64,000 nucleotides of DNA. It comes from Phaeosaccion multiseriatum (lineage: Eukaryota; Protista; Ochrophyta, other classes). Where the stretch lies: assembly GCA_965112735.1 (NCBI GenBank), contig OZ218958.1:310001-374000 (forward strand), written 5' to 3'. Position 1 is the first letter of the stretch; each line of letters opens with the position of its first letter. Below the pieces are notes generated by a model. That model saw only the letters and a program-made list of their open reading frames with translations, did no database searches and was not told the DNA's origin. The position numbers were made by a program, and so were the translations under genes. Below are positions 3,057-62,029 of the stretch, piece after piece.

Positions 3057-4373
3057 ATGACGAAGACAGCGGCAACATTGGTGTCGGCGACGGTGCTCCT
3101 GGCGAGCATGGGTAGCGAGGGCGTCTCCGCCTTCGTGGCGCCTTCTCTACAGCACGCTGGCCACCTGCAGCGGAGCATGGCAGGGCCCGCAGCATCGGCA
3201 AGGGCAATCCGAAGCGGGTCGGCCCAAGCTGGGGCGAACAAGAGGAGGGTGGCAGCGGGCTTGAAGATGTCTAGTCCCGAGAGCGACGCAGCAGGCACGA
3301 CGGCAACGCTGACCGCGAGCGAGAAGGCATTGCAGCAGCTGGAGATGGCCAAAGCACTCCGCGAGGAAGCGGAGCGAATAGAGCAAGGACTGAAGGACGC
3401 AGAGCAGCAGGACATTGTACAGGGCTTCGAGAAGTTTGACCTTGACGGGGACGGTCGAGTGGACAGAGACGAGCTGCAGCTGGGCATGGAGAAGCTTTTG
3501 CGAGATGACTTCGTGAAGAAGCTCAAGACTGCGCTGAGGAGGAGCCCGACAAAGGAGGAGGTGGAGGAGCGCATCAGCAGGCTGCCGAGGGGAGAGCTGC
3601 TCCCCAAGGCGTCTCTCAAGAAGCTGCTGAAGGAGTACGACTCGAACAGCGATGGCACTCTGACGTTGGATGAGTTTAACAAGCTGCCGAGGATGAAGAG
3701 CTCCCTGGACAAGATTTTCGCGGAGGAGAGGCAAGCTCAAGTAGCCGCAATGATTGAGGAACGCAAGGCCGCACGGGCCGCCGAGGACGAGGCTAACGGC
3801 CGCGCCCCGAAGAAGATGTCCAAGATCGGCGGCATTTCCACCGACATGGAGGTCAACAACGGCGAGCCGACGCCCGGGGACAGGCTGTTCTCCATCCTGC
3901 CCTACCTCCTGCCCCTGTGCGACAGTGTGGTGTTCGGTGGGCATCTCATCAGCTCGAACCCGAGTCTGTGGGCCCCCGTCGCTGTGCCCCTGGCCATCAT
4001 CAGCGGCATCTACCGCGCCGTGCCCCTGGGCGGGCTGTTGGCCTTCTTTGCCATCTCAGCCGCCTCCAACAACCCTAGCGTCAACAAGCTGGTGCGGTAC
4101 AACCTTCGGCAATCCATCAACCTCGACATTGCCTTGTTCTTGCCCAACCTCCTCCTCTTCATCGGAGGCTTCGCGGCCAACCAACTCAAGATCGACCCGG
4201 CCTTCGCTTCGAGTGTCGGAGAGGGACTGGCGGACTTTGTGTTCATTGCTACTTTGATCAGCATTGCCTACAGCGTTGGTACCTCGGCACTCGGAAAGTT
4301 CCCCACGGGCCTGCCGCTCCTGGGGGAGATGAACAGAGAGAACCCCCGTTACGACGAGGGAGACGACGAGTAG
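3057..4373 (+). CDS. Plastid-targeted EF-hand + Tic20/Ycf60-family membrane protein (single exon)
   Basis: Signal peptide ending VSA|FVAP (ASAFAP motif) followed by a transit peptide. Two canonical EF loops, DLDGDGRVDRDE and DSNSDGTLTLDE. C-terminal DRLFSILPYLLPL...VRYNLRQSINLDI and 4 TM segments typical of Tic20. Confidence 0.85.
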   Translation: MTKTAATLVSATVLLASMGSEGVSAFVAPSLQHAGHLQRSMAGPAASARAIRSGSAQAGANKRRVAAGLKMSSPESDAAGTTATLTASEKALQQLEMAKALREEAERIEQGLKDAEQQDIVQGFEKFDLDGDGRVDRDELQLGMEKLLRDDFVKKLKTALRRSPTKEEVEERISRLPRGELLPKASLKKLLKEYDSNSDGTLTLDEFNKLPRMKSSLDKIFAEERQAQVAAMIEERKAARAAEDEANGRAPKKMSKIGGISTDMEVNNGEPTPGDRLFSILPYLLPLCDSVVFGGHLISSNPSLWAPVAVPLAIISGIYRAVPLGGLLAFFAISAASNNPSVNKLVRYNLRQSINLDIALFLPNLLLFIGGFAANQLKIDPAFASSVGEGLADFVFIATLISIAYSVGTSALGKFPTGLPLLGEMNRENPRYDEGDDE

Positions 4374-14830: not shown

Positions 14831-14937
14831 CTCTTTTTTTTTTTCTCTCTCTCTCTCTCTCTCGCAAGACAGTGTCCGGTTTCGGTTTGGAGCAGCCCTT
14901 TTTGAAGTCAACAACAGCAAATCTCTCACCATGTGCC

Positions 14938-16729
14938 ATGTGCCAAGAAGGCGAGACTCCTCTGTACCACGCGACGGACAAGGGTAACTTTGACTTGGTG
15001 AAAGCATTTGTGGAGGTGGGTGCGAACATCAATGTGAAGTGTGCGAAGGAGCAGACTGCGCTGGCTCGGGCTGCAGAGTCTGGTCGCACGGACATCTTGG
15101 CGTTTCTGCTCGACAAGGGCGCGACAGTGGAGGGCAGCGACGCGTTGCATCGGGCGGCGGCTGTGGGTAGCTCTGTGTGTGTGAGAGCCATGCTCAAGGC
15201 CGGAGCCAAGCCGAACGACCGAGACAAGAAGGGCAGGACGCCTGCGCAGGTGTGCTGCTCTGGAACAGGAGGAGAACGAATTGAGTGTCTGTCTGCACTG
15301 CTGGAGAGCGGAGGGGATGTGCACGTGAATCGTGCGGGGGATACCCTACTTCATCTCGCCGCGGCTGCTGGAAATGTGGAGTGCTTTCCTCTCTTGCTGG
15401 AGATTGGGCAGCAGCTTGATACCAGAAATGAGCGAGGGGCAACACCGCTGTTTCAGGCGTGTCGATACCAACGCCTGGCGTGCGCGAAGGAACTCATTCA
15501 TCTCGGCTCCAGCCTTGATAGGGCGTCCACACTAGCGACCAGTGGACGCCCTCTCACCCCCCTCCTGCTTTCCGTCATGAGCGGCAATGTGGAGATTGCA
15601 TCGGAGCTAGTACGTGCCGGCGCCTCTGTGCATGCCAAGGCCGGCTACTCAGTCACTGCGCTACACTTCGCCGCTGCCTTGGGGAGCATAGAGATGGCCT
15701 ACCTGCTTGTGGAGGCTGCTGCTGACGTCAGCGCTCTCGATGAGCAGCAAGAGACTCCTCTGATGACCTGCATGCACCCTGGTGATAGCTTGGTGTACTA
15801 TCTTCTCGCAGAATATTTACCTGCTTTCGCCCCTCGTGCAAGGGTGAAGAAGGGAAGGAAGAAGGTTGCCACCTTTCTGCTCAAGATGGGCGCGGCCGGT
15901 TCTGGACGACAAAACCATCGCTCTGATTGCACAGAAGGGCTTTGGTGAAGTACTGTCCACGTTTGTGCACAAGGGCAGAGAGGAGCGGGACGCCCTTGTG
16001 GACCGGCTCGACACGGTGGCAGAGCACTTCTCAGTGAGTACCGCGGGTGACGACGAGAAGACCGACGATGTGGTGCGGGTACAGTTGATTAACAAGGCTA
16101 CCGGAGAGAAGGGACGGAAGCAGTACACCTTGAGCATGCCCTTGGTGGAGCAGCTCATGGAGCAGGTCAGGGAGGGAGGCGGGGAGGGCGAACAGAGCGA
16201 CGGCAACGAGTCCTCTGCTGCAGGCATTCTGCCCACCATACTCGACCCTTCCAAGCGCGGTTTCAAGGCTGGCAAGAAGGGCAATGGCAAGGGAAAGGTC
16301 AAGGAGATTGAGCTCGAGTACGACGGGGTGGGCTATACCGAGGAGGGCTTTGATGCTGTGGTCAAGTTCGTCACCACGGGCAGTGTGGAAGAGCTGTTGG
16401 CGACAAGGCCCAGATCAGCGGGGAAGAGAAAGAGAAGCCAGAGCAGCGGCAGCAGCGGAAGCGGCGAGGGGGCCAGCAGCAGTGGGGGGGCGAGTGAGAG
16501 GAAAGAGTGTGTGAAGCTATTTGACGAGGTCAGAGCGAAGCAAGCCCTGCAGGCAGCGGACTTCTTCTGCCTGGAGGGCATGTCGAGGGAGGTGAAGGCG
16601 TTGATGGGCGAGTTCGGCTTTGAGGTGCAGCGGGAGGAGGGAGGAGGGAACGAGCAGGAGAAGGAGGAGCAAGGGGAAGTAATCCATGTCGATGGCGACG
16701 GGCCCTCCGCCAAGAAGAGCAAGCCTTGA
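14938..16729 (+). CDS. Intronless ankyrin-repeat + BTB/POZ protein with one frameshift near 15893 (sequencing error or pseudogene)
   Basis: Canonical ankyrin repeats (GETPLYHA, GDTLLHLAA, GATPLFQA, TPLLLSV, TALHFAA) in ORF 14872-15948. Overlapping ORF 15866-16729 has BTB-like features (FDAVVKFVTTG...ALQAADFFCLEGM). The frames join as KMGA-PVLDDK. Confidence 0.7.
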
Positions 16730-18923: not shown

Positions 18924-20204
18924 GTCTCTTTCTTCCTCTCGCCCCCCCCTCTCTCTCACCTCCACACCCCTCCATCTACCTCCCCCTCCCTCCCCTCCCT
19001 CCCCTCCCTCCCTCTCGGGCTCCTCCAAAAAATGATCGTGCCCAAGGAGGACAGAGACGCCGCTCGCATCGTGGAGGAGCAGCTCCTCGAAGACGGCATC
19101 AAGTTCAACTTCGACTTGAAGTTTGACAAGATGGAGACAGTCGTAGGGCAACAAGGAGCAGCCGGTGGAGACCATATGGCAACCGTCGCTGACGTCATGA
19201 GAGTAACGTGCCGACAAGACGGACCCGATGGAGAGGAGGAGAAGGAGGTGGTGTTCGAAGCCGAGGCACTGCTCGTTGCTACAGGACGTAAACCCAATGT
19301 CCAGGGCATTGGCCTCGAGGCCGCAGGGGTCAAGTATGACACTCGCAACGGGGTGGAGGTGAACGATCAGCTGCAGACGTCCAACAAGGCGATTTTCGCG
19401 GTGGGGGACTGCCGCACACCGTTTCAGTTCACGCACGTGTCGGACTTTATGGCGCGAATCGTCATTCGCAACGCGCTCTTCTTCGGCAAGGGCAAGTTCA
19501 GGTATGTTCATGTTGTCTCATGTCATCTTACATCATCTTATCTGCTGTGGAGCGGAGGTGTGGCATCCCTTGTAGTGGGTGGGGAGCGGGTGGGAGGTGC
19601 GGGTGGAAAGAGTGGTGACAGGCGGGCCGGCCCTGCATCCATTGGGTCTGTCGCTTCTCTTTTTCTTCTTCTTCTTTGTAGGATGAGAGATGCTGACCTA
19701 TCGCTCTCCCCTCCACCTCCACTCCACTCCTCTCCACCTCCACCACTTCCCTCTTCCCTTCCCCTCCCCCCCACCCCAACACCCCCACTCCACCCCACTC
19801 TACTCCACTATCAGCTCCCTGCTCATTCCCTGGGCCACCTACACGGAGCCCGAAGTCGCACAGGTGGGCCTGTACCCGCGCGATCTCGACGCGCAGGGCA
19901 TCAAGTACGACACGTACACCAAGCAACTCGCGGACGTTGATCGAGCCATCTGTGAGGGGGACACGAGCGGATTCGTCAAGGTACACGTGAAGGCCGGCTC
20001 GGATACCCTCCTCGGCGCCACCATTGTCGGGGCTAGTGCAGGGGACTTGATTAGTGAGCTCAGTGTGGCGATGCAGAATGGCATTGGGATTGGAAAGCTC
20101 GCCGCCGTCATCCACCCCTACCCCACGAGTGAGTTCATGCGTTGGTGGTCTATCTGCGTGTTGCGTGTCAGAGACGAGTTTCGTTTAACCTCTCCATCTT
20201 GTCG

Positions 20205-20332
<128 letters not shown>

Positions 20333-21587: not shown

Positions 21588-23183
21588 CTAATAATCGTCC
21601 TCGTACTCGTATATGATAAGACCCTCAGGTCGATCAGCAGGCAGAGGATAGTCCTCACCAACGGTTAGCTCCATGAGGTCAGCAGGCAGCTTCTCAATGG
21701 GGCAGGTGTAGTTCCGTCCAAGCTTGAGAATCCGGAGCGAAGCAGGCAGGGCCAGGGGGAGGTTAAAGTCCCACCCCATGTTCACCTCCTCCACACCGCA
21801 AGGAAGGACCACGTGCTGATAGAACCAAAAGCCAAATGTGATCTTCTTCAGCGAAGCGGGCAGCTCCAGAGGGAGGTTAAAGTACCTACCCATGTCCACC
21901 TCCTCCACACCGCAAGGAAGGACCACGTGCTGATTGAACATTTCGCCAAATCTGATCTTCTTCAGCGAGGCAGGCAGCTCCACAGGGAGGTTAAACGCAC
22001 ACCCCATCTCCACCTCCTCCACACCGCCAGGAAGGACCACGTGCTGATTGAAGTGTGCGCCAAATCTGATCTTCTTCAGAGAAGCGGGGAGATCCAAAGG
22101 GAGGTTAAAGAACTTACCCATATCCACCTCCTCCACACCGCAAGGAAAAGCCACGTGCTGATTGAAGCTCGAGCCAAATGTGATCTTCTTCAGCGAAGCG
22201 GGCAGGTCGAGAGGGAGGTTAAAGGCCCACCCCATCTCCACCTCCTCCACACCGCAAGGAAGGACCACGTGCTGATTGAAGCTCGAGCCAAATGTGATCT
22301 TCTTCAGCGAAGCGGGGAGATCCAGAGGGAGGTCAAAGGCCCACCCCATCTGCACCTCCTCCACACCGCAAGGAAGGACCACGGGCTGATCGAACCTTGA
22401 GCCAAATGTGATCTTCTTCAGCGAAGCGGGCAGGTCGAGAGGGAGGTTAAAGTCACACCCCATCTCCACCTCCTCCACACCGCAAGGAAGGACCACGTGC
22501 TGATTGAAGCTTTCGCCAAATGTGATCTTCTTCAGCGAAGCCGGGAGATCCAGAGGGAGGTTGAAGTCCCGCCCCATCTGCACCTCCTCCACGGTTCTTG
22601 GCAATGCGATGTTAGCTTGGTTGAAATGGTCCGAGAAACACACACGCTTGACCGATGCCGGTAATAGCGCCAACGCCTTCGTGACCAGAGTTTCGTCAGC
22701 GGAGGCCAGATCAAGAACATGACAGTAGCTCCTGCTGGGACCCAGGCGCACAGCTGCAATGCCGAACGTGCGTCTCGGTTTGCCTCCCCTCAAGCCCCCC
22801 TCTACTACCTCTCCGCTGCCAATGGCCCCCACCTCTGCCGCTAGAGATGGTGAAATACGAGTGTGCTTCTCCTCTTCCCGCTGCTGCCACCGGAGGAGAC
22901 CGAGCATATGCTGTTGGACAGGGGCGGGTGCAGCGGAATTCAGCACGAGAGTGCGTGATGTCACCTCGTCGAGGGCCCGGCTGACACCCCAAAGTTCCTT
23001 GCTCCGCAGTACGGTATCGAGAACACCCCAGGCCGCCACAGTCTGGCTCCTGCTGTCCCCAGCTTGGACGGTGCACGCAGTAGAGATACCAGCGGCGCTC
23101 TGCTGCTGGGGACTGTGAAATATCATCCTCCCCGCCTCTCCCGCCTCTCCCTGTTGCCGGCACTCCTGAGCGCGGCGTTTCAT
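21588..23183 (-). CDS. FNIP-repeat (LRR-like) protein, intronless
   Basis: Alternating 19-aa units LPASLKKITFGxxFNQHVV and LPCGVEEVxMGxxFNLPLD match the FNIP consensus. First ATG is at 23183 (the ORF track starts at a GTG at 23342). Confidence 0.85.
   Translation of the reverse strand: MKRRAQECRQQGEAGEAGRMIFHSPQQQSAAGISTACTVQAGDSRSQTVAAWGVLDTVLRSKELWGVSRALDEVTSRTLVLNSAAPAPVQQHMLGLLRWQQREEEKHTRISPSLAAEVGAIGSGEVVEGGLRGGKPRRTFGIAAVRLGPSRSYCHVLDLASADETLVTKALALLPASVKRVCFSDHFNQANIALPRTVEEVQMGRDFNLPLDLPASLKKITFGESFNQHVVLPCGVEEVEMGCDFNLPLDLPASLKKITFGSRFDQPVVLPCGVEEVQMGWAFDLPLDLPASLKKITFGSSFNQHVVLPCGVEEVEMGWAFNLPLDLPASLKKITFGSSFNQHVAFPCGVEEVDMGKFFNLPLDLPASLKKIRFGAHFNQHVVLPGGVEEVEMGCAFNLPVELPASLKKIRFGEMFNQHVVLPCGVEEVDMGRYFNLPLELPASLKKITFGFWFYQHVVLPCGVEEVNMGWDFNLPLALPASLRILKLGRNYTCPIEKLPADLMELTVGEDYPLPADRPEGLIIYEYEDDY
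21740..22600 (-). repeat. 114-bp coding tandem repeat, ~7.5 copies
   Basis: Anchor gccaaatStgatcttcttcag recurs at 21831, 21945, 22059, 22173, 22287, 22401 and 22515 (period 114). Confidence 0.95.
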
Positions 23184-23641
23184 TGCTCTTCCCTTTCGGG
23201 GGAAAGAAAAAAAGGCTGGGGCCCGGTACAGAGAGCGATGATAGCTGACAGCAGTCAGTGGCTGTAGAGGAGAAGTTGAGGTGCGGGAAGATGGTTCAAG
23301 TCCTGCGTATTCGCGTTCAAAGCTCCTCACTGGATCCGTCACGCGAGCCTCCCCATTATAAACCTCTGTGAAGGCTGTTTTGAAGCACCAACACGCTAAG
23401 GCCGTGGGAGGAGGCTCGGGTCGCCTGAGGCCCCTTCCTCTGGAGCAGAGCGGTCTTGAGTCGGTCCGAAGGTAGTGGTGCTACACGGTGTGAGCACAAG
23501 AGGACACAAGAGCAAGTGGAGTAGAGTAGGCAAATGCGACCCCAGTGGAGCGCCGAGGTTAGAAGGCAAGAAGCAATACATATATAGAAATACGGCTGCT
23601 CTGCCCATGCTGCTCTGCCCAAGCTGCTCTGCCCCGCTTCG

Positions 23642-25824
23642 TCAGCGCTCTGATGGTGTGACTTGCGCCCCGCGACTTGCAGCGGCAGCAGCACTTGCGT
23701 CTCCACCTCGCAGTCTTTGGGCTTCCCCCGGTGCTCCTTCCTCGGCATCATCTGCACCAGCAACTGCTTCTGCTCCTCCTCCTCCTCCCGCTGCGGCCTC
23801 TGCCGCCGCGGCCTCCGCCTCCCATTGCCTCACCACAGCTCTACTGCGGAGGTCGGCCTGCCGCACAGGCTCCGGTACTCGGAAGCGGCTCGTGGTTCCG
23901 ACCAGTCGCAGTGCCAGCCGCAGCGACACTCGGTGGCCCACAGACACGAACACCGGTCTCCGAAGCGACTTATGCAGGAGCAAGGCTGCCCCCCACATCC
24001 GTCCAGACGCCCCCTGCAACAGTACGTGCAGAGGGTAGTTCTGTTCCTGTTCCTGCTCCTGCTCCTCGCCCTCCTCGTTCTCCTCCTCCTCATTGCGTCC
24101 TTTGTGGTCGTCCTCCTCATCATCGCCGTCGGCCTTTCCACTGCTGGTGCCCTCCCTGTCCCTCCTCCTGCCCGGGTTGGCGGAAGGGGCGCTACCACTG
24201 CTACTGCCATCGACTTCGCTCGGTGCCGGCGCGGGTGTTGTATCACCAACTGCTGCTGTTGCTGCTGTTGCTGTACCACCAATTGCTACCGCTTCTGGTG
24301 GAGTATCACCAACTGCTACTGCTTCTGGTGCTGTATCGCGAACTGCTGCCCGCTCCTGTGGACACTTCGCCGCCTCTATTTGGGCCATGACGGACTCCTT
24401 GGTCATGCCGTCCATCTACATGTATGTAGTATGTAAGGACACGTAAGGGGCTGCGTCAGGGGCAGAGGAGGGACATTTGCACTCACGCACACACGCACAC
24501 ACAACGGAATACCACAGCAAATTTGATCGCCACATGTTCACAAGTCCGGGCAGGGTCTTGCCGGTGACAGGGGGGTGGACGAAGGAATGAATGACTGAAC
24601 GTCCATCAAAGTCGGTAAGATGAGGAGACGTGAGCAGAGCGGAACACGAGCAGAGCCCGTCTGCGGTGTGTGGAAAGTGGGAAAGTTCTCCACACCCCTC
24701 CTTTTCTGACCTGGAGAAAGTTCTTGGCCAGCCCGACGCAGCGGTGCCCCGTGAGAACTCCCAAGTGGGAGGCCAGGCCCATGGCCCGGGGGTGGAGCAC
24801 TCCATTGCCATCACAGATGACAACGTCCGGCTGGAGATCGGGCCTCTCCACCTGGGTAGGGGGCAGAGCCATGCCATCCAAGATTGGTGTGCACTAGTGT
24901 AAGGAGGTTTCCGCGTAGGGTATGAGGGATGATGACGATCTTTCCCCATCCATGGGTCCATGCGAGGGCTCACTCCCTATTCAATCTCTCTCTGGCTCGA
25001 AGGGAATGGCCTGCCTTGCCAACTGCCTCCGCTCTTGAGGGCCACTGCTCGTCAGCTACGACACTGCTCCTCAGTCAAGTTGACTGCACGATCACGGCAC
25101 AGGACGAGCGGTTCTACTGCCCATCTGTGTGACTGGTGCTCACCTTGAGACGATCGAAGAGAGGCAGCAAGTGGCCCACTTCTCGGAAGGCCAAGAACCC
25201 CGGGATGTAGGGCTCCCGCATGGTCACTCTGTCGAAGGCCTCCCACACCACCTCCAGCGAGGGCCAAGAGAGCACAACGAGAGAGGCACACGCGTTTTCG
25301 TTGGAGCCCTTAACGAAGCTAATGTCCACCTAGAGTATCACATACAAAGAGAGGGAAGGGGTCGCAGCCAGGTTGCCAAGCAGGGGAGTGAAGGGGAGGG
25401 GTGACATATATACATGACTGAGTCCCCATCGGCCGAACACCTGAGGAAAACTAACTTCTACAGCCTATGCCTTAAGCTGAATGCCTGCGTATCTGCCTAC
25501 AGCCCACACGCCTCCGCCCCAGCCCATCTTACTCACCCCACCCAAGTAGCGGAGATGCTGTCGGGGGAGCGGCTCGCTCTGCCCATCACGCTCACCGCAG
25601 TTTCTACCCCCTGAAGAACCCTTCACATCCCTCTCGCCCTCGTCATCCTCCTCCCCTTCCTCGTCCTGCTGATCAAAGATCCAAGATACATCGTCTTCTT
25701 CGACAACTTGTTGCCGGAGGCGCCGCTGCTCTTCCGCCCAGGAAGCCTCCAGCTCAACATCAGCTTGAGGCGGCGGTCGCGGTGCTTCTGCCTCTCCTCC
25801 TACTTCTCCCCCCCCCTCGTCCAT
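23642..25824 (-). CDS. ENDOV: Endonuclease V (inosine 3' endonuclease)
   Basis: Exons 25824-25537, 25329-25144, 24851-24711, 24415-23642. Motifs GGVDISF, PYIPGFLAFRE, DGNGVLHPR..GLASHLG, GLAKN, PVFVSVGH, RVPEPVRQAD. Contains a long low-complexity insertion. Confidence 0.93.
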
Positions 25825-56594: not shown

Positions 56595-59500
56595 ATGGGG
56601 GCGCAACAATCGTTTCCCCGTGGCACGGGCGCCGCTAACGGCTCAAGAAGCAATCAAGACGGGGTTCTCCACAACATTGGCCCTTTGCTGAGGGAGACGC
56701 AGGTCTTCGCCAAATGTGAGTGGGAGACCAGCCACATGGGATTTCGCCGCTATGCATCCGTGCATTTTGCTGCATTTGTGGTATTAATCCTCCTCGCTTA
56801 TCCTGTTGACTTGTCCACGCCAGGGACGATACACGACGTTCGCCAGCTCTACAAACGCTTCAAAGGGCAGGTGTTTGGCTTTTCTCTGGTGGAGCCACAG
56901 TTTGAATGCGTCGTGAGCTTCAAGGAGGGCCTGGAGAAGGAAGTCGGTGTCTCGCTGCACGCGCTCTTCAACATCCTCGACAATGATAATGATGGCAGGA
57001 TCGACGGCCTGGAGTTGCTGGGCGGCCTTGCGCTGTGCTGCACGGGGTCCTTTGAGGAGAAGACGCGCCTGTGCTTTGAGCTTTACGACTTTAACCTGAA
57101 CGCCTCTCTGTCCCGGAGCGAGCTGGTCATGATGATGCAGAGCTCCGTGTGTGGTATGCTCGTGCTGACGGGGATGATGGAGGAGCACGAGCCCCCGTTA
57201 GAGTATTTTGAGATGCTGGCCGCAGAGGTAAGGAGAAGCGAAGCTGGTGCGGTCTTCAAGACGGTCAGGCGGGCGTGGCCGGATGACCCATTGGAATGAC
57301 GAAAATATGGCGCACCCCTCCTCAGGCTTCCAGGCCCGTTATGTGATTGACCTTCTCCTCATTTCCTTCGCCCCCCCCCCCCCCAACCTTTCTTCTCCCT
57401 CCCTTCCGTCCTCCCGTTGGCTTGTCACTGTAATGCAGGCTGTTAAGAAGGTGGGCAGCGCAGACCAGCAGTCCATCGGATACGAGGGCTTTGTGGACTG
57501 GGCTCGCTCCAACAGAGAGATGATGACTTGCCTGGAGAGGGTCAGTCAGGCCACTCGCATGCCTCACGAAGACACTGACAGGTATATGAGCCAAGGGGGG
57601 GGGGGGGGGGCAGGTGTTTTATTGCGCTGAAGTCGCTGCGCCTCACTCGTCGCTGAGCGCAAGTCTTGCGTGTACTGACGTGATCCACCCCTTCTCTTTT
57701 GAGCCTCGCAACCCTTCTGCTTCCTTGCTCACCCAACTGAACCCTCTCTCTTTAATCCTTTCGTGCCCGCCTTTGCCGATCCTTGGAACGGCTCCGTCAC
57801 CTGCTCCCGTGCTTCTCAGCGAGGACTGCGCAAGCGAGGCGAGCGAAGACGGTCCAGACAGCGACTTGGAGGCCGAGCTCAGGAGTGCGGGGAAGGAGCT
57901 GGAGCCAGACGCCAAGCTCGTGAATGCGCATTACGGTGGCGGTAGCAGCTACAAACAGCAGCAGGAACAGCAGCAGCAGCAGCGGCGGCGGCAGCGACTC
58001 GACGGCAGCGGCAGCGGGCAGCACCGGACCACGAAAGGTGCTCAACGCGAGAGCTTGGCCCCGTTCAGAGGCCCAGGAGGCGGCGGGGATGAGTTCATGG
58101 CGGTGAGGCCGTGGCTAGGAACCATTGTCGAGCCCACAGGATACGTGCCTGAAAAGAAGAATGCCGGGGAGGCTCCCGACAGTAACCTCCACTTGGCATG
58201 GGTGAACGGATATCGTGCCCAGGACTGCCGCAACAATGTGCTCTACCTCAACAGCTCGGAACCCCATATGGCGGGAGGAATCGTGTACCCAGCGGCGGCT
58301 TTGGGTATCGTGTATGACCCTGTGACCCACACGCAGCGCTACTACCAGGGCCACACAGATGACGTCATCTCCATCGCGATTCATCCGGATGGAGTCTTGG
58401 TGGCCACCGGACAAGTGGGAAAGACTCCAGCCATTCACGTGTGGGACAGCACATCCCTCGAATGCCAGGTGGGTGAGGGCCCTGCGAACAAAGCAATGAA
58501 TGTTTCCATTTGCTGATCGTCGAAGAGTGTACGGCTTTCTCCTCTCGTTTGCTGCTGCCGCCGCCGCCGCTCAAACCGAGCCTTGGGCCCTTCCCACCCC
58601 GCCGTCTCTCGCTTTGCTTCACCTCATTCAGGTCAGTATCAGCGGCTTCCATCGGCGAGGAGTGTCACTGCTGTGCTTCAGTCCGGACGGAGGGCGGTTG
58701 GCCAGCGTGGGTCTTGACAACGACCACTCTATCGCCATTCACGACTACTGGCGCTCGGGTAAGCTACTCGCCTCGGGAAAGGGTCACCCGAGGAAGCTTC
58801 TCGGTCTGGCCTTCAGTCCCGACGGAAAGACAATTGTTGCGGTCGGGGTCAAAGTTGTGCGCTTCTTTACTGTGGAAGGGCGGAGTCTCAAAGGCCGCAA
58901 TGCTACTGTCGGCCGCAAGGGCCAGATGCAGACCTTTCTGTGCGTGTGCTTCATCGGGAACGACGCTATTGTCGGCTGTGCCTCCGGTGAGCTGTACCGC
59001 TTCTCTGGGCAGAAGCTCGTGCAAGTGATACAGGCACACGGAGTCAAGGAAGCTGTACTTGCCATGGCACCCTCGCCGGCCACAGGCGGCATCATCACGG
59101 GAGGGAGGGACAACATGGTCCACACATTCGACAGCTCACTCAAAGCGGTGGGGCCATCCGTCGACCTGGCCGAGGACCTGGACGGGGACGGCAAGGCGGA
59201 CTATGAGAGCTGCTGTCCGTCGGTGGTGAGTGTGTGCGCAGGTCATCGAAAGCTGCTGGTGGGGACGCGAGGGAGTGAGATTTTCGAAGTCCAAATGCCC
59301 CAGGGGGTCACGGAGCAGCAGCCTCGAGTACGACGCTTGCTTGCAGGGCATTACGCGGGCGAGGTGTGGGGGCTCGATGCTCACCCCCACAAGGCCGAGT
59401 ACGCATCTGCGGGTGACGACAAGACCATCCGCCTGTGGAGCTTGCGCAGGAGGGACCAGATTCTCATGCGCGACTTGCCTGAAGCGGCTCGGACGGTGAC

Positions 59501-62029
59501 ATACTCCCCCGACGGTCGGTACCTGGCCCTGGGCATGAACAATGGGGCAGTTGCCGTGCTGAGGAGCAGCGATTTGGCGACGGTTTCGGCCTGGCGCCAC
59601 TGCAAACGAGCCGTGTCGGTGATACGCTATTCTCCGGATGGCTCCGTGTTGGCTGTGGGGGGGCACGACACCAACATTTATCTATACAGCATCGATCCGT
59701 CCATCGCCGGAGGAGGAGAGGAGCCGGGGGCGGGCGGAGGGGGCGAAGGAGGGAGGAGAGGCGGCGGACGCGGTGGTGCCGCCGAGACCCGGGGGGGTGG
59801 CGGAGCGGTGAGAGGCCGACACGTAGCTGCCCCCGGGGGGGGGTCGATGCTGGGCGGACGCGGCAGCAGGAGCGCAGGCGCAAGCCTTGGCGGTGGCGGG
59901 CACAAAGTGCCTGGTGTCAGGGGAAATTCAAAACGACGGGGGATGGGGGTGGGGGGCACTGCCAGAGTCGGAAGTGCGGGAGCAGGGCTGGGACGGGAGG
60001 CAGGCGGGGAGGGGACCAACACCAGGGGGGGCGCAAGGAAGGCGTTTGCTCGCCGCGCCGTCTGTCGCGGACACAGCAGCTACATTACGCACATGGACTT
60101 CTCCGCCGATGGCAAGGTGCTTCAGAGCAACTGTGGGGCCTACGAGCTCTTGTTTTGGGACACAGTGGGCAATCAGATTCGATCTGCCTCGTCGCTCAGA
60201 GATGTGCATTGGGCCTCGTGGACGTGCACCCTGGGTTGGCCCGTGCAAGGTGAGAAGAAGAGGAGAGGGGGGCGGCTCCGAGTCGAGGCCCCAAGGCAGG
60301 AGAGGACATGGGGAGGGGGTGCCGATCTCGAGAAAGCGCAGCACTGAACGAGCTTTCCGTCGTTTCGCATGTACTTCCACGAATGTGGGCGGCAACCTTT
60401 CCTTCCTTCCTTCCTTCCTTCCTTCCTTCCTTCCTTCCTTCCTTCCTTCCTTCCTTCCTTCCTTCCTTCCTACACCTCCTTCAATTACTTACCTGCTTAC
60501 ATGTGTTCTTTTATAGGTATTTGGCCCACTTGCTCGGATGGTACCGACATTAATGCCGTCGACAGAGACATCGCAGCGGTAAGTCAAGGAAAAGACGTCC
60601 GGAGCGCTCCAGCGTATATGTGAATGAGAGATCGAAGGGCAGTCCGTCTCGGAAACACTAACGGGGGGCATGGGGTTGATGGGAAGAAAGCATGCCTTCG
60701 CCCCATGAGATGACTTTACCTTGCCGAAGTACTGGGTCGGGCTTTTTTTGTTTTGACCCTCTTCCAGATAAGAGGGAGGAAGGGAAGCCTGACGAGACGA
60801 AACTGAAACTGGAACTCGCCCCACCTTGTTTTCCCGCCCCCTCTCGCCCACCCTCTCTCCACCGACGATGTGATTGGAATGCATCGCTACTGCATGGGAG
60901 CAGGGCGTACTCGCTACGGGAGACGACATGTCCGGAGTCAACCTCTTTCGATACCCATGCGCGAGCAAGGCGCCTCTGAAACTGTCATACAAGGGGCACA
61001 GCAGCCACGTCACCAACGTACGATTTAGCAGCGACCATCGCTTCCTCCTCTCCACGGGCGGGGGGGATCGGTGCGTCTTTCAGTGGAGGCATGAGTTGGA
61101 GGACTACGAGAGCACGGACGAGGAGGAGGGCGACGATGACGACGACGACGATGAGGAGGACGGAGAGGCTGGGCAACACAGCAACAAGGTAAGCGCGGGC
61201 GGGCCAGAAGAGTATGGCAGATGCAGATCGGTAGATAGTGTGATTTCCTCACCCACTCCAACGTGCTCACTGCTCACTGCTCACTGCGGGCAGCAGGTCA
61301 AAAGTGACGGGCTTTGACTGACCTTGCTGGCTGCAAGCCTGCCTCGACTCGACATCTTCTCTCTGCTTTATGCACACACATACCGCACTGGTCCTGCTTA
61401 CTTACTTTGCTTCGCTTGCCCACCCAAACAGCCAACAACTGCGTCGCCGCCGGACCTCCCTGCCTCCTCCCGCCCTTGGCTGGACCAGTCCGACTTGCTC
61501 CTTCTGGGGCACCAAGGAGGGGTGCGCGCGTCAAGCGGAGGCCCTGTTCAGTCGGCAAGGGGCGGCGGCGGGGATGAGTTCATGGCTTTCAAGCCGTGGG
61601 TCGGAGTCATCGTGGAGCCCACCGCCCACGCCCGTGGAGAGGGCTTACATAGTAAGTGGAGAGGGCTTGCTTCTCGCATTGGGCTGCTTTCTTCTCTTTT
61701 TCTTTCGAGCTTCACTAAACGCCTCGAAGAGCGTTGTGTGTTGTTGTGCGGAGGCGCCCTTGTGCTTTTGCTCCACCCCTTGCCCTCCCATTGATCTTCT
61801 TCGCCCCCTGTGCACTCTCCTCTTGTCTCCACCCCCTTCCACCCCGCCCCCCCCTCTACAGGCGGGAGCACTGACGTGGACCTGGAGCTGTCTTGGGTTT
61901 ACGGCTATCGCTCACAGGACTGCAGGAACAACCTCTTCTACTCCGCCGGACTGGACGTCGTGTACCACGCAGCGGCGTTAGGGGTGGTGTACAGGAAGGC
62001 AAGAGGCGAGCAGATCTTTCAGCAGGTAC

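What the first reader, a model, noticed from the sequence alone, without database searches (positions are those of the whole stretch)
21740..22600. FNIP repeat array with hypervariable di-residues in a near-invariant scaffold
Seen: the 38-aa (114-bp) units are nearly identical except the two residues after each Gly. A-type FG[ES,SR,SS,SS,AH,EM,FW]F; B-type MG[RD,CD,WA,WA,KF,CA,RY,WD]F. One upstream position also varies (T/R; Q/E/D/N). The changes are multi-nucleotide and chemically radical. Known: FNIP repeats are LRR-like solenoids expanded in Dictyostelium and giant viruses, and LRR immune receptors diversify exposed concave-face residues. Inference: a modular recognition surface, analogous to TALE RVDs or VLRs, diversified by repeat shuffling or selection. 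It is a candidate variable pathogen receptor in an alga.
Basis: partly seen in the sequence, partly recalled or inferred. Interest (0 to 1): 0.75.

Follow-up and report, generated by a model that had tools for sequence, protein, structure and literature searches.

The report
Fast-evolving FNIP repeat protein gene
This is one intact gene of a very large family of FNIP-type leucine-rich-repeat proteins in an alga. A few surface residues per repeat change much faster than the almost fixed scaffold; this pattern is real and looks selected, but it is already published for this protein class, and no immune role is shown.

Summary
Window 21588-23183 (minus strand) is an intact, single-exon, 531-aa gene with seven near-identical 114-bp units. 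All 12 nucleotides of the four hypervariable codons vary, against 19 of 102 elsewhere (p = 2.6e-8).

It is an FGxxFN (FNIP) leucine-rich-repeat protein: Pfam E = 8e-51, and CroV588 is the best PDB match by sequence and by fold. The variable sites are repeat positions 5, 8 and 9. The CroV588 crystal paper (PMC9525666) already calls these the most variable positions, places them on or beside the concave face, and draws the comparison with lamprey variable lymphocyte receptors (VLRs).

In 47 paralogue reading frames (504 units) the same sites carry 3.0-3.8 bits of entropy. dN/dS inside those codons is 2.1 (CI 1.5-3.5). Arrays are mosaics formed by unit duplication and block exchange.

Features that differ from published FNIP proteins:
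- a 19-residue repeat that alternates FG and MG types;
- a conserved N-terminal module with no credible relative among 1.84 billion proteins, and not a detectable F-box.

There is no signal peptide and no signalling domain. An immune role, a TALE-like code and somatic diversification are all untested.

This scan had already reported the same family in other windows of this genome.

The parts
21588..23183 (-). Complete single-exon coding sequence: ATG at 23183, stop at 21590-21588, 531 aa. FNIP/FGxxFN leucine-rich-repeat protein.
   Evidence: Reading frame; sequence. Pfam FNIP PF05725 E = 8.3e-51 over 9 stretches. CroV588 6nyr E = 2.8e-76. No hydrophobic segment: maximum Kyte-Doolittle score 1.18.
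22845..23129 (-). Conserved N-terminal module (protein residues 19-113; motif LWGV[CS]..(D)..TSRTLV.N...P..VQ..ML..L), shared by the paralogues, of unknown type.
   Evidence: Alignments A1 and A2 have invariant W, G, D and R. No Pfam hit, no PDB hit, and no word-search hit. The profile search of 1.84 billion proteins gave only one spurious repeat reading frame. hhalign against seven F-box-like domains of this genome gave probability 1.2%.
22551..22664 (-). First, degenerate repeat pair (reading-frame aa 227-264; variable-site signature C,DH / Q,RD). This is the only unit that is positionally conserved among the closest paralogues.
   Evidence: the same signature CDH.QRD appears in L035, L037 and L038.
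21753..22550 (-). Seven regular 114-bp (38-aa) units, each an FG-type plus an MG-type 19-residue LRR. Hypervariable dipeptide codons lie at 22509-22514 and 22452-22457 in unit 1, then every 114 bp down to 21825-21830 and 21768-21773. Semi-variable codons are at unit positions 10 and 29.
   Evidence: The AlphaFold2 model has pLDDT above 95 here, with a short strand every 19 residues covering unit positions 8-10 and 27-29.
21591..21752 (-). Two degenerate C-terminal repeats and an acidic cap (ALPASLRILKLGRNYTCPIEKLPADLMELTVGEDYPLPADRPEGLIIYEYEDDY).
   Evidence: Conserved in the paralogue alignment A1.

Best explanation
**What it is.** The gene encodes a soluble, intracellular FGxxFN-type (FNIP) leucine-rich-repeat solenoid. 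It has about 18 repeats of 19 residues, alternating FG and MG types. In front of them sits a constant N-terminal module that the whole paralogue family shares.

**Where the variation lies.** In each repeat the buried residues (L, I/V, F/M, G, F, N, L, P) are fixed. Three positions vary: repeat position 5, at the end of the concave-face strand, and positions 8-9, in the loop at the edge of that face. Stacked over the repeats, these would form one ridge, which is the likely ligand-binding surface.

**How the diversity arises.** It arises in the germline across a family of probably more than 100 genes, in three ways:
1. Tandem duplication of 114-bp units.
2. Exchange of multi-unit blocks between paralogues, which also keeps the scaffold homogeneous.
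3. Single-nucleotide replacement changes at the six exposed codons per unit, favoured by selection.

**Most likely function (inferred).** A repertoire of binding proteins with different ligand specificities, coupled through the constant N-terminal module to a common partner. The ligands, and whether the role is defence, are unknown.
For: **Shown**
- FNIP family membership and fold.
- The variable sites correspond to CroV588 positions 5, 8 and 9 (alignment; paper).
- Family-wide entropy is 3.0-3.8 bits at unit positions 13, 14, 32 and 33, and 2.7 bits at positions 10 and 29. Most scaffold positions are under 1.6 bits; positions 4, 18 and 23 reach 1.9-2.3.
- Scaffold dN/dS is 0.2-0.6.
- Hypervariable dN against scaffold dS: about 2.3-2.6-fold over all pairs, 6.7-fold for best-matched units, and 14.8-fold (CI 10.5-21.8) in 38 mutual nearest-neighbour pairs.
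- dN/dS inside the hypervariable codons themselves is 2.1 (CI 1.5-3.5). This does not depend on orthology or on gene conversion.
- Codons at patch B are one-step neighbours with a retained third base: CGT, TGT, GGT, CAT, TAT, GAT, GCT and CTT, each followed by GAC. This indicates point mutation.
- A [WA-SS][WA-SS] tandem unit duplication lies inside this gene.
- Paralogues share collinear blocks of units.
- The hypervariable composition is rich in D, R, S, E, H and W.
- The family is very large: 1932 first-look repeat candidates, clustered on C9, C12, C13 and C1.
- No signal peptide or membrane segment.

**Inferred**
- That the ridge binds ligands.
- That the N-terminal module is a common docking part.
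Against: - No ligand, expression or phenotype data exist.
- The scaffold is homogenised, so scaffold dS is a poor clock. Units with identical hypervariable signatures show 11% third-position scaffold divergence, while the most similar scaffolds carry unrelated hypervariable residues. The large ratios (6.7 and 14.8) are therefore inflated by non-orthology.
- The robust estimate (2.1) rests on few synonymous sites.
- The unique N-terminal region has dN/dS of about 0.5-0.9, so constraint on the family is generally loose.
Confidence: 0.65

Rival explanations
1. The family is a germline-encoded intracellular immune (non-self recognition) repertoire. The variable ridge binds pathogen or virus proteins, and the constant N-terminal module triggers a response.
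For: - Positive selection on exposed LRR residues.
- A large, clustered, recombining family.
- These are hallmarks of plant NLR LRR domains and of the brown-algal LRR-ROCO and NB-ARC-TPR candidates (PMC3341825).
Against: - No NB-ARC, ROC-COR, TIR, kinase or death-fold domain.
- The N-terminal module matches nothing known.
- No infection or expression data.
- Some units keep their variable residues across paralogues.
- FNIP families of similar size occur in giant viruses and Dictyostelium, where no immune role is known.
Confidence: 0.25
2. The family is a virus-derived, largely dispensable gene family. The xx positions are simply unconstrained, and gene conversion homogenises the rest, so the pattern needs no adaptive recognition function.
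For: - FNIP genes of brown algae are regarded as virus-related (PMC4421812; bioRxiv 10.64898/2026.04.27.720984).
- The genes are intronless.
- N-terminal dN/dS is 0.5-0.9.
- Broken copies exist, with stop codons inside matches.
- The protein atlas places the N-terminus nearest to giant-virus F-box/FNIP clusters, though at scores below 0.9.
Against: - dN/dS inside the hypervariable codons is above 1 (2.1, CI 1.5-3.5), which is more than neutrality gives.
- First and second codon positions change more than third positions (0.42 and 0.33 against 0.27).
- The scaffold is under purifying selection.
- The gene lies among ordinary cellular genes (TIC20, EML, Pyr_redox, ankyrin) with no shift in base composition.
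Confidence: 0.2
3. Diversity is produced by programmed or somatic diversification: VLR-like cassette copying, DGR-like targeted mutagenesis, or hypermutation aimed at the xx codons.
For: - Near-identical DNA scaffold with multi-nucleotide changes confined to 6-7-nt patches.
- Unit pairs with 0 of 96 scaffold differences but four or five residue changes at the variable sites.
Against: - The germline gene is complete and in frame.
- The differences are between fixed genomic copies.
- The codon-neighbour pattern fits ordinary single-base substitution filtered by selection.
- Identical variable signatures persist across paralogues at dS of about 0.1.
- No reverse transcriptase or template repeat was noticed near the gene, but I ran no dedicated search of the window for one.
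Confidence: 0.03

Closest known systems
FGxxFN / FNIP LRR proteins of Cafeteria roenbergensis virus (CroV588, PDB 6nyr; CroV539, PDB 7zal), Huyton et al. 2022, PMC9525666
   Same: - Same Pfam family.
- Best PDB match by sequence (E = 2.8e-76) and by fold (Foldseek E = 7e-22).
- Same LxxLxFGxxFN core with near-identical repeats.
- The same most-variable positions (8-9, then 5), on and beside the concave face.
   Different: - The repeat is 19 residues, not 22; three residues are missing from the convex loop.
- Strict alternation of FG-type and MG-type repeats gives a 38-aa super-repeat, and Met replaces the first Phe of the spine in every second repeat.
- A conserved N-terminal module is present that CroV proteins lack.
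- The gene is cellular and chromosomal.
- Here dN/dS was measured; the paper only notes variability.
FNIP gene families of brown algae (104 in Ectocarpus, 121 in Saccharina japonica; among the largest orthogroups across brown algae)
   Same: - A large expansion of FNIP genes in an alga that looks like a stramenopile.
- The best named outside hit is a Pylaiella littoralis FNIP protein.
   Different: - Only about 33% identity over about half the query.
- The Pylaiella protein has 22-23-residue spacing and no LWGVC module.
- The N-terminal module has no credible relative in the public library.
F-box + FNIP proteins of Megavirus baoshan and Dictyostelium (putative SCF substrate receptors)
   Same: - The same architecture logic: a constant N-terminal module plus a variable FNIP array.
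- Protein-atlas features of the N-terminus are nearest to such viral clusters (0.83-0.89, a lead only).
   Different: - No F-box is detectable: Pfam finds nothing, and hhalign against this genome's own F-box-like domains gives probability 1.2%.
LRR domains of plant NLRs and brown-algal LRR-ROCO / NB-ARC-TPR candidate receptors (Zambounis et al. 2012, PMC3341825)
   Same: - Clustered, recombining repeat genes.
- Positive selection on exposed repeat residues.
- Shuffling of repeat units.
   Different: - No nucleotide-binding or GTPase signalling domain.
- Repeats are not separate exons; shuffling occurs within one exon.
- A different LRR subclass.
Lamprey VLRs and Xanthomonas TALEs
   Same: A near-invariant repeat scaffold with specificity residues at fixed positions.
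   Different: - VLRs are secreted or GPI-anchored and are assembled somatically from cassettes around an incomplete germline gene. This gene is complete and has no signal peptide.
- TALEs are alpha-helical 33-35-aa repeats that read DNA one base per repeat. This is a beta-strand LRR with no evidence of a code.

Membership tests
FNIP / FGxxFN LRR (Pfam PF05725) | Match to the family HMM above the curated cut-off | tested here: met
   170.3 bits against a cut-off of 21, E = 8.3e-51, 9 stretches.
FNIP / FGxxFN LRR (Pfam PF05725) | FGxxFN motif in each repeat (double phenylalanine spine) | tested here: inconclusive
   Every second repeat has FGxxFN. The alternate repeats have MGxxFN, with Met in place of the first Phe. 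The spine geometry could not be inspected without coordinates.
FNIP / FGxxFN LRR (Pfam PF05725) | Repeat length of about 22 residues (21 in Megavirus baoshan) | tested here: not met
   The repeat is 19 residues, and the tandem period is 114 bp, i.e. 2 x 19 aa. HMMER aligns it to CroV588 with a 3-residue gap per repeat. A 19-residue form also occurs in a metagenomic FNIP protein, P0005.
FNIP / FGxxFN LRR (Pfam PF05725) | LRR solenoid fold like CroV588 or CroV539 | tested here: met
   The AlphaFold2 repeat domain has pLDDT above 95 with one short strand per 19 residues. The top Foldseek hits are 6nyr (E = 7e-22) and 7zal (E = 4.5e-9).
FNIP / FGxxFN LRR (Pfam PF05725) | Most variable positions are 8-9 (the xx of FGxxFN), then 5 | tested here: met
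   Entropy is 3.0-3.8 bits at the xx positions and 2.7 bits at position 5, over 504 units.
F-box/FNIP SCF substrate receptors | N-terminal F-box domain | tested here: not met
   No Pfam F-box in the protein or in 23 paralogue N-termini. hhalign of A2 against A3 (seven F-box-like domains of this genome) gives probability 1.2%.
NLR / ROCO-type LRR immune receptors | NB-ARC, NACHT or ROC-COR signalling domain joined to the repeats | tested here: not met
   FNIP is the only family above the Pfam cut-off. The N-terminal module has no match.
NLR / ROCO-type LRR immune receptors | Diversifying selection on solvent-exposed repeat residues | tested here: met
   dN/dS inside the hypervariable codons is 2.1 (CI 1.5-3.5). 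Hypervariable dN is far above scaffold dS.
Variable lymphocyte receptors (VLR) | Incomplete germline gene completed somatically from flanking LRR cassettes; secreted or GPI-anchored product | tested here: not met
   The germline reading frame is complete. There is no hydrophobic leader or anchor. Somatic variation itself cannot be tested without reads.
TAL effectors | 33-35-aa alpha-helical repeats with a variable di-residue at positions 12-13 that reads one DNA base per repeat | tested here: not met
   The repeats are 19-aa beta-strand LRRs. Nucleic-acid binding was not tested.

The most novel reading that the evidence does not exclude
The constant N-terminal module has no credible relative among 1.84 billion proteins. 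It may be a lineage-specific signalling or docking domain that turns over 100 hypervariable FGxxFN LRR proteins into an intracellular, germline-encoded recognition (immune-like) repertoire of a stramenopile alga. That would be a third solution, beside NLRs and ROCO/TPR receptors.
Probability: 0.2. Interest if true: 0.65.

Novelty: new member of a known kind. Interest (0 to 1): 0.33.

Why it matters
FNIP (FGxxFN) proteins are among the largest gene families in brown algae, slime moulds and giant viruses, yet no function is known for any of them. This gene and its paralogues give a quantified case that the xx ridge is under diversifying selection (dN/dS above 1 inside the codons themselves) and that arrays are rebuilt by unit duplication and block exchange. 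I found no such measurement in the papers I read. They also define a subfamily with a 19-residue repeat and a constant N-terminal module of unknown type. That module is a concrete handle, as bait for partners, for finding out what such repertoires do. As a discovery it is modest: the central pattern and the VLR comparison are already in print, and this scan has reported the same family several times in this genome.

Tried and rejected
- **Plus-strand reading frame 21813-22400.** This is a stop-free artefact of the repeat. The minus strand carries the FNIP match.
- **F-box at the N-terminus.** Rejected at the level of detection. hhalign paired only 'MP..VQ.RML..L' with the 'LP.E....I...L' start of the F-box, at probability 1.2%.
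- **Relatives of the N-terminal module.** The word search found none. The full profile search gave one hit, P0137, which is a tandem-repeat junk reading frame.
- **Organism identification.**
  - The EML-like neighbour gave only weak hits, including Phaeothamnion at 31% identity.
  - The FNIP query gave Pylaiella at 33%.
  - TIC20 in the window shows a plastid-bearing host.
  - I can therefore say 'probably a stramenopile alga', which agrees with earlier notes, but I have not proved it.
- **Tree-based site counting (SLAC-like).** I did not run it. A 96-nt homogenised scaffold gives no reliable tree, and conversion violates the model. I used pair-based estimates instead and state their biases.
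- **Viral island.** Rejected for this locus. Base composition is uniform and the neighbours are cellular genes.

Full report
**1. Observation**

The array lies in one long minus-strand reading frame, 21588..23342 stop-to-stop. The first ATG is at 23183, which gives a 531-aa protein.

Tandem Repeats Finder reports a 114-bp period, 7.5 copies, 87% matches and no indels at 21736-22592.

Cut into 19-residue halves, the protein reads as alternating 'LPASLKKITFGxxFNQHV' and 'VLPCGVEEVxMGxxFNLPL' repeats.

Among the seven regular units:
- All 12 nucleotides of codons 13, 14, 32 and 33 vary, against 19 of the other 102 (Fisher p = 2.6e-8).
- Those four codons hold about 43% of all pairwise differences (my sum of the per-codon values).
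- Many scaffold codons are identical even at synonymous sites.

**2. What the protein is**

- Pfam finds only FNIP (PF05725, E = 8.3e-51, nine stretches).
- The best solved relative by sequence is CroV588 (6nyr, E = 2.8e-76), then CroV539 (7zal).
- An AlphaFold2 model built on 26 paralogues has pLDDT above 95 throughout the repeat domain, with one short strand every 19 residues.
- Its best Foldseek hits are again 6nyr (E = 7e-22) and 7zal.
- HMMER aligns each 19-residue repeat to the 22-residue CroV588 repeat with a three-residue gap in the convex loop.
  - Unit positions 10 and 29 therefore correspond to CroV position 5.
  - Unit positions 13-14 and 32-33 correspond to CroV positions 8-9.
- In the model, the strands cover unit positions 8-10 and 27-29.
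- There is no hydrophobic leader or membrane segment; the maximum Kyte-Doolittle score is 1.18. The protein is therefore predicted to be soluble and intracellular.

**3. What is already published**

I read Huyton et al. 2022 (PMC9525666). It states that:
[quoted passage not shown] - 104 such proteins occur in the brown alga Ectocarpus.

Other papers add context:
- Ye et al. 2015 report 121 FNIP proteins in Saccharina (PMC4421812).
- A 2026 preprint lists FNIP among the largest, putatively virus-derived, orthogroups of brown algae.

**4. The family in this genome**

The window is C9:310001-374000 of a 67-Mb, 22-contig assembly.

- The FNIP model gives 1932 first-look candidates; 147 of the 150 that were scored passed. 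They cluster on C9, C12, C13 and C1.
- The protein itself finds paralogues along its whole length. The closest are 84-90% identical; most lie on C9 at 0.6-1.05 Mb, and one lies on C13.
- At roughly 10 units per gene, this implies well over 100 genes. That figure is my inference.
- From 60 loci I extracted 47 distinct reading frames and 504 units.
  - Entropy is 3.0-3.8 bits at positions 13, 14, 32 and 33, with 17-20 of the 20 amino acids used at each.
  - It is 2.7 bits at positions 10 and 29.
  - Most scaffold positions are under 1.6 bits; positions 4, 18 and 23 reach 1.9-2.3.
- The variable sites are rich in D, R, S, E, H and W. They use 155 and 128 of the 400 possible dipeptides at the two patches.

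**5. Selection**

The scaffold is under purifying selection, with dN/dS of 0.2-0.6.

Hypervariable dN exceeds scaffold dS in every comparison:

| Comparison | Hypervariable dN / scaffold dS |
|---|---|
| All pairs, no pair selection | 2.3-2.6 |
| Best scaffold match of each unit of this gene in its eight closest paralogues | 6.7 |
| 38 mutual nearest-neighbour pairs | 14.8 (bootstrap CI 10.5-21.8) |

As an independent clock, dS of the unique N-terminal region between this gene and those paralogues is 0.07-0.15.

There is a caveat. The scaffold is homogenised, so similarity of scaffold does not identify orthologous units.
- Units with identical variable signatures differ at 11% of scaffold third positions.
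- The most similar scaffolds carry unrelated variable residues.
- The large ratios are therefore inflated.

The estimate that is free of this problem is dN/dS inside the hypervariable codons themselves. It is 2.1 (CI 1.5-3.5), and the differences fall as position 1 > 2 > 3 (0.42, 0.33, 0.27). It is above 1, but it rests on few synonymous sites.

**6. How the diversity is made**

Three processes are visible.

- *Unit duplication.* In this gene the run WA-SS-WA-SS is a tandem 114-bp duplication in the B-to-A register. The two copies differ at five scaffold nucleotides and have identical variable codons (my reading of the sequences).
- *Block exchange between paralogues.*
  - L033 and L034 share their last five units.
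  - L035, L036 and L037 share 'TAR.VRD'.
  - L035 and L036 also share 'TNC.EWD', while the rest of their arrays is unrelated.
  - Of this gene's units, only the first, degenerate one (CDH.QRD) has a twin in the eight closest paralogues. Its seven regular units are unique.
- *Point substitution.* Codons at patch B are one-step neighbours that keep the third base: CGT, TGT, GGT, CAT, TAT, GAT, GCT and CTT, each followed by GAC, and CGG, TGG and AGG followed by GAC. This fits single-base replacement changes filtered by selection. It does not fit copying of old cassettes or untargeted hypermutation.

**7. The N-terminal module**

All paralogues share a roughly 95-residue module (LWGV[CS]..D..TSRTLV.N...P..VQ..ML..L) with invariant W, G, D and R.

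- It has no Pfam match, no PDB match, and no word-search hit.
- A profile search of 1.84 billion representative proteins gave one hit, which is a junk repeat reading frame.
- Viral and Dictyostelium FNIP proteins often carry an F-box, so I compared the module with seven F-box-like domains of this same genome. hhalign gave probability 1.2%.
- The protein atlas puts the N-terminus nearest to giant-virus F-box/FNIP clusters, but at 0.83-0.89, below the level at which such hits mean anything.

The module is of unknown type. It is the most original feature here.

**8. Context and organism**

Base composition is even across the window. The neighbours are cellular genes: an EF-hand/TIC20-like protein, a pyridine-nucleotide oxidoreductase, an ankyrin protein and an EML-like WD40 protein. 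This is not a viral island.

TIC20 indicates a plastid-bearing host. The best named outside hits are from the stramenopile algae Pylaiella and Phaeothamnion. This weakly agrees with earlier notes that call the organism a stramenopile alga.

**9. Verdict**

The pattern is real, strongly non-random and family-wide, and it is best explained by germline diversification of a ligand-binding ridge under selection.

It is a new member of a known kind (FGxxFN LRR). Its variant features are the 19-residue repeat, the FG/MG alternation and an unknown constant N-terminal module.

An immune role, a TALE-like code and somatic diversification are not supported by any test available here.

The scan had already reported this family on other DNA of the same genome. 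My results agree with those notes, and I checked the cited paper myself.

Noticed in passing
window 22845-23129 (-), and alignment A2 of 23 paralogues: A conserved roughly 95-aa N-terminal module of the FNIP family (LWGVCKEVD..TSRTLVIN..MP..VQ.R.LS.L). It has no Pfam or PDB match and no credible hit in a profile search of 1.84 billion proteins.
   Followed up: yes
window 3057-4373 (+): A 438-aa reading frame combining EF-hand calcium-binding motifs (residues about 120-210) with a C-terminal TIC20-like chloroplast import domain (26.. bits just under the cut-off: 27.1 against 28.6). This may be a calcium-regulated plastid import component.
   Followed up: no
window 20200-20332: A (TGTC)n microsatellite of about 34 copies, just downstream of or inside the 3' part of the pyridine-nucleotide oxidoreductase gene. 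It creates long artefactual reading frames in several frames.
   Followed up: no
window 14872-15948 (+): An ankyrin-repeat reading frame (Ank_2 E = 4e-45) about 5.6 kb from the FNIP gene. Here the two are separated by another gene, so no pairing is evident.
   Followed up: partly
window 58500-60347 (+): An EML-like double beta-propeller (WD40) reading frame of 615 aa. The best outside hit is only 50% identical over 40% of the query.
   Followed up: partly
window 24240-24362: A 30/60-bp tandem repeat inside a low-complexity reading frame immediately upstream of the FNIP gene. Coding status is unknown.
   Followed up: no
L033/L034 (C9:921-929 kb) and L035/L036/L037 (C9:0.61-1.04 Mb): Paralogue arrays share collinear blocks of units with identical variable signatures, next to unrelated units. 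These blocks would be the best material for recombination-aware selection tests.
   Followed up: partly
protein P0005 (JGI metagenome, 665 aa): An outside FNIP protein that also has strict 19-residue FGxxFN spacing. It shows that the short repeat form is not unique to this genome. It lacks the N-terminal module.
   Followed up: partly
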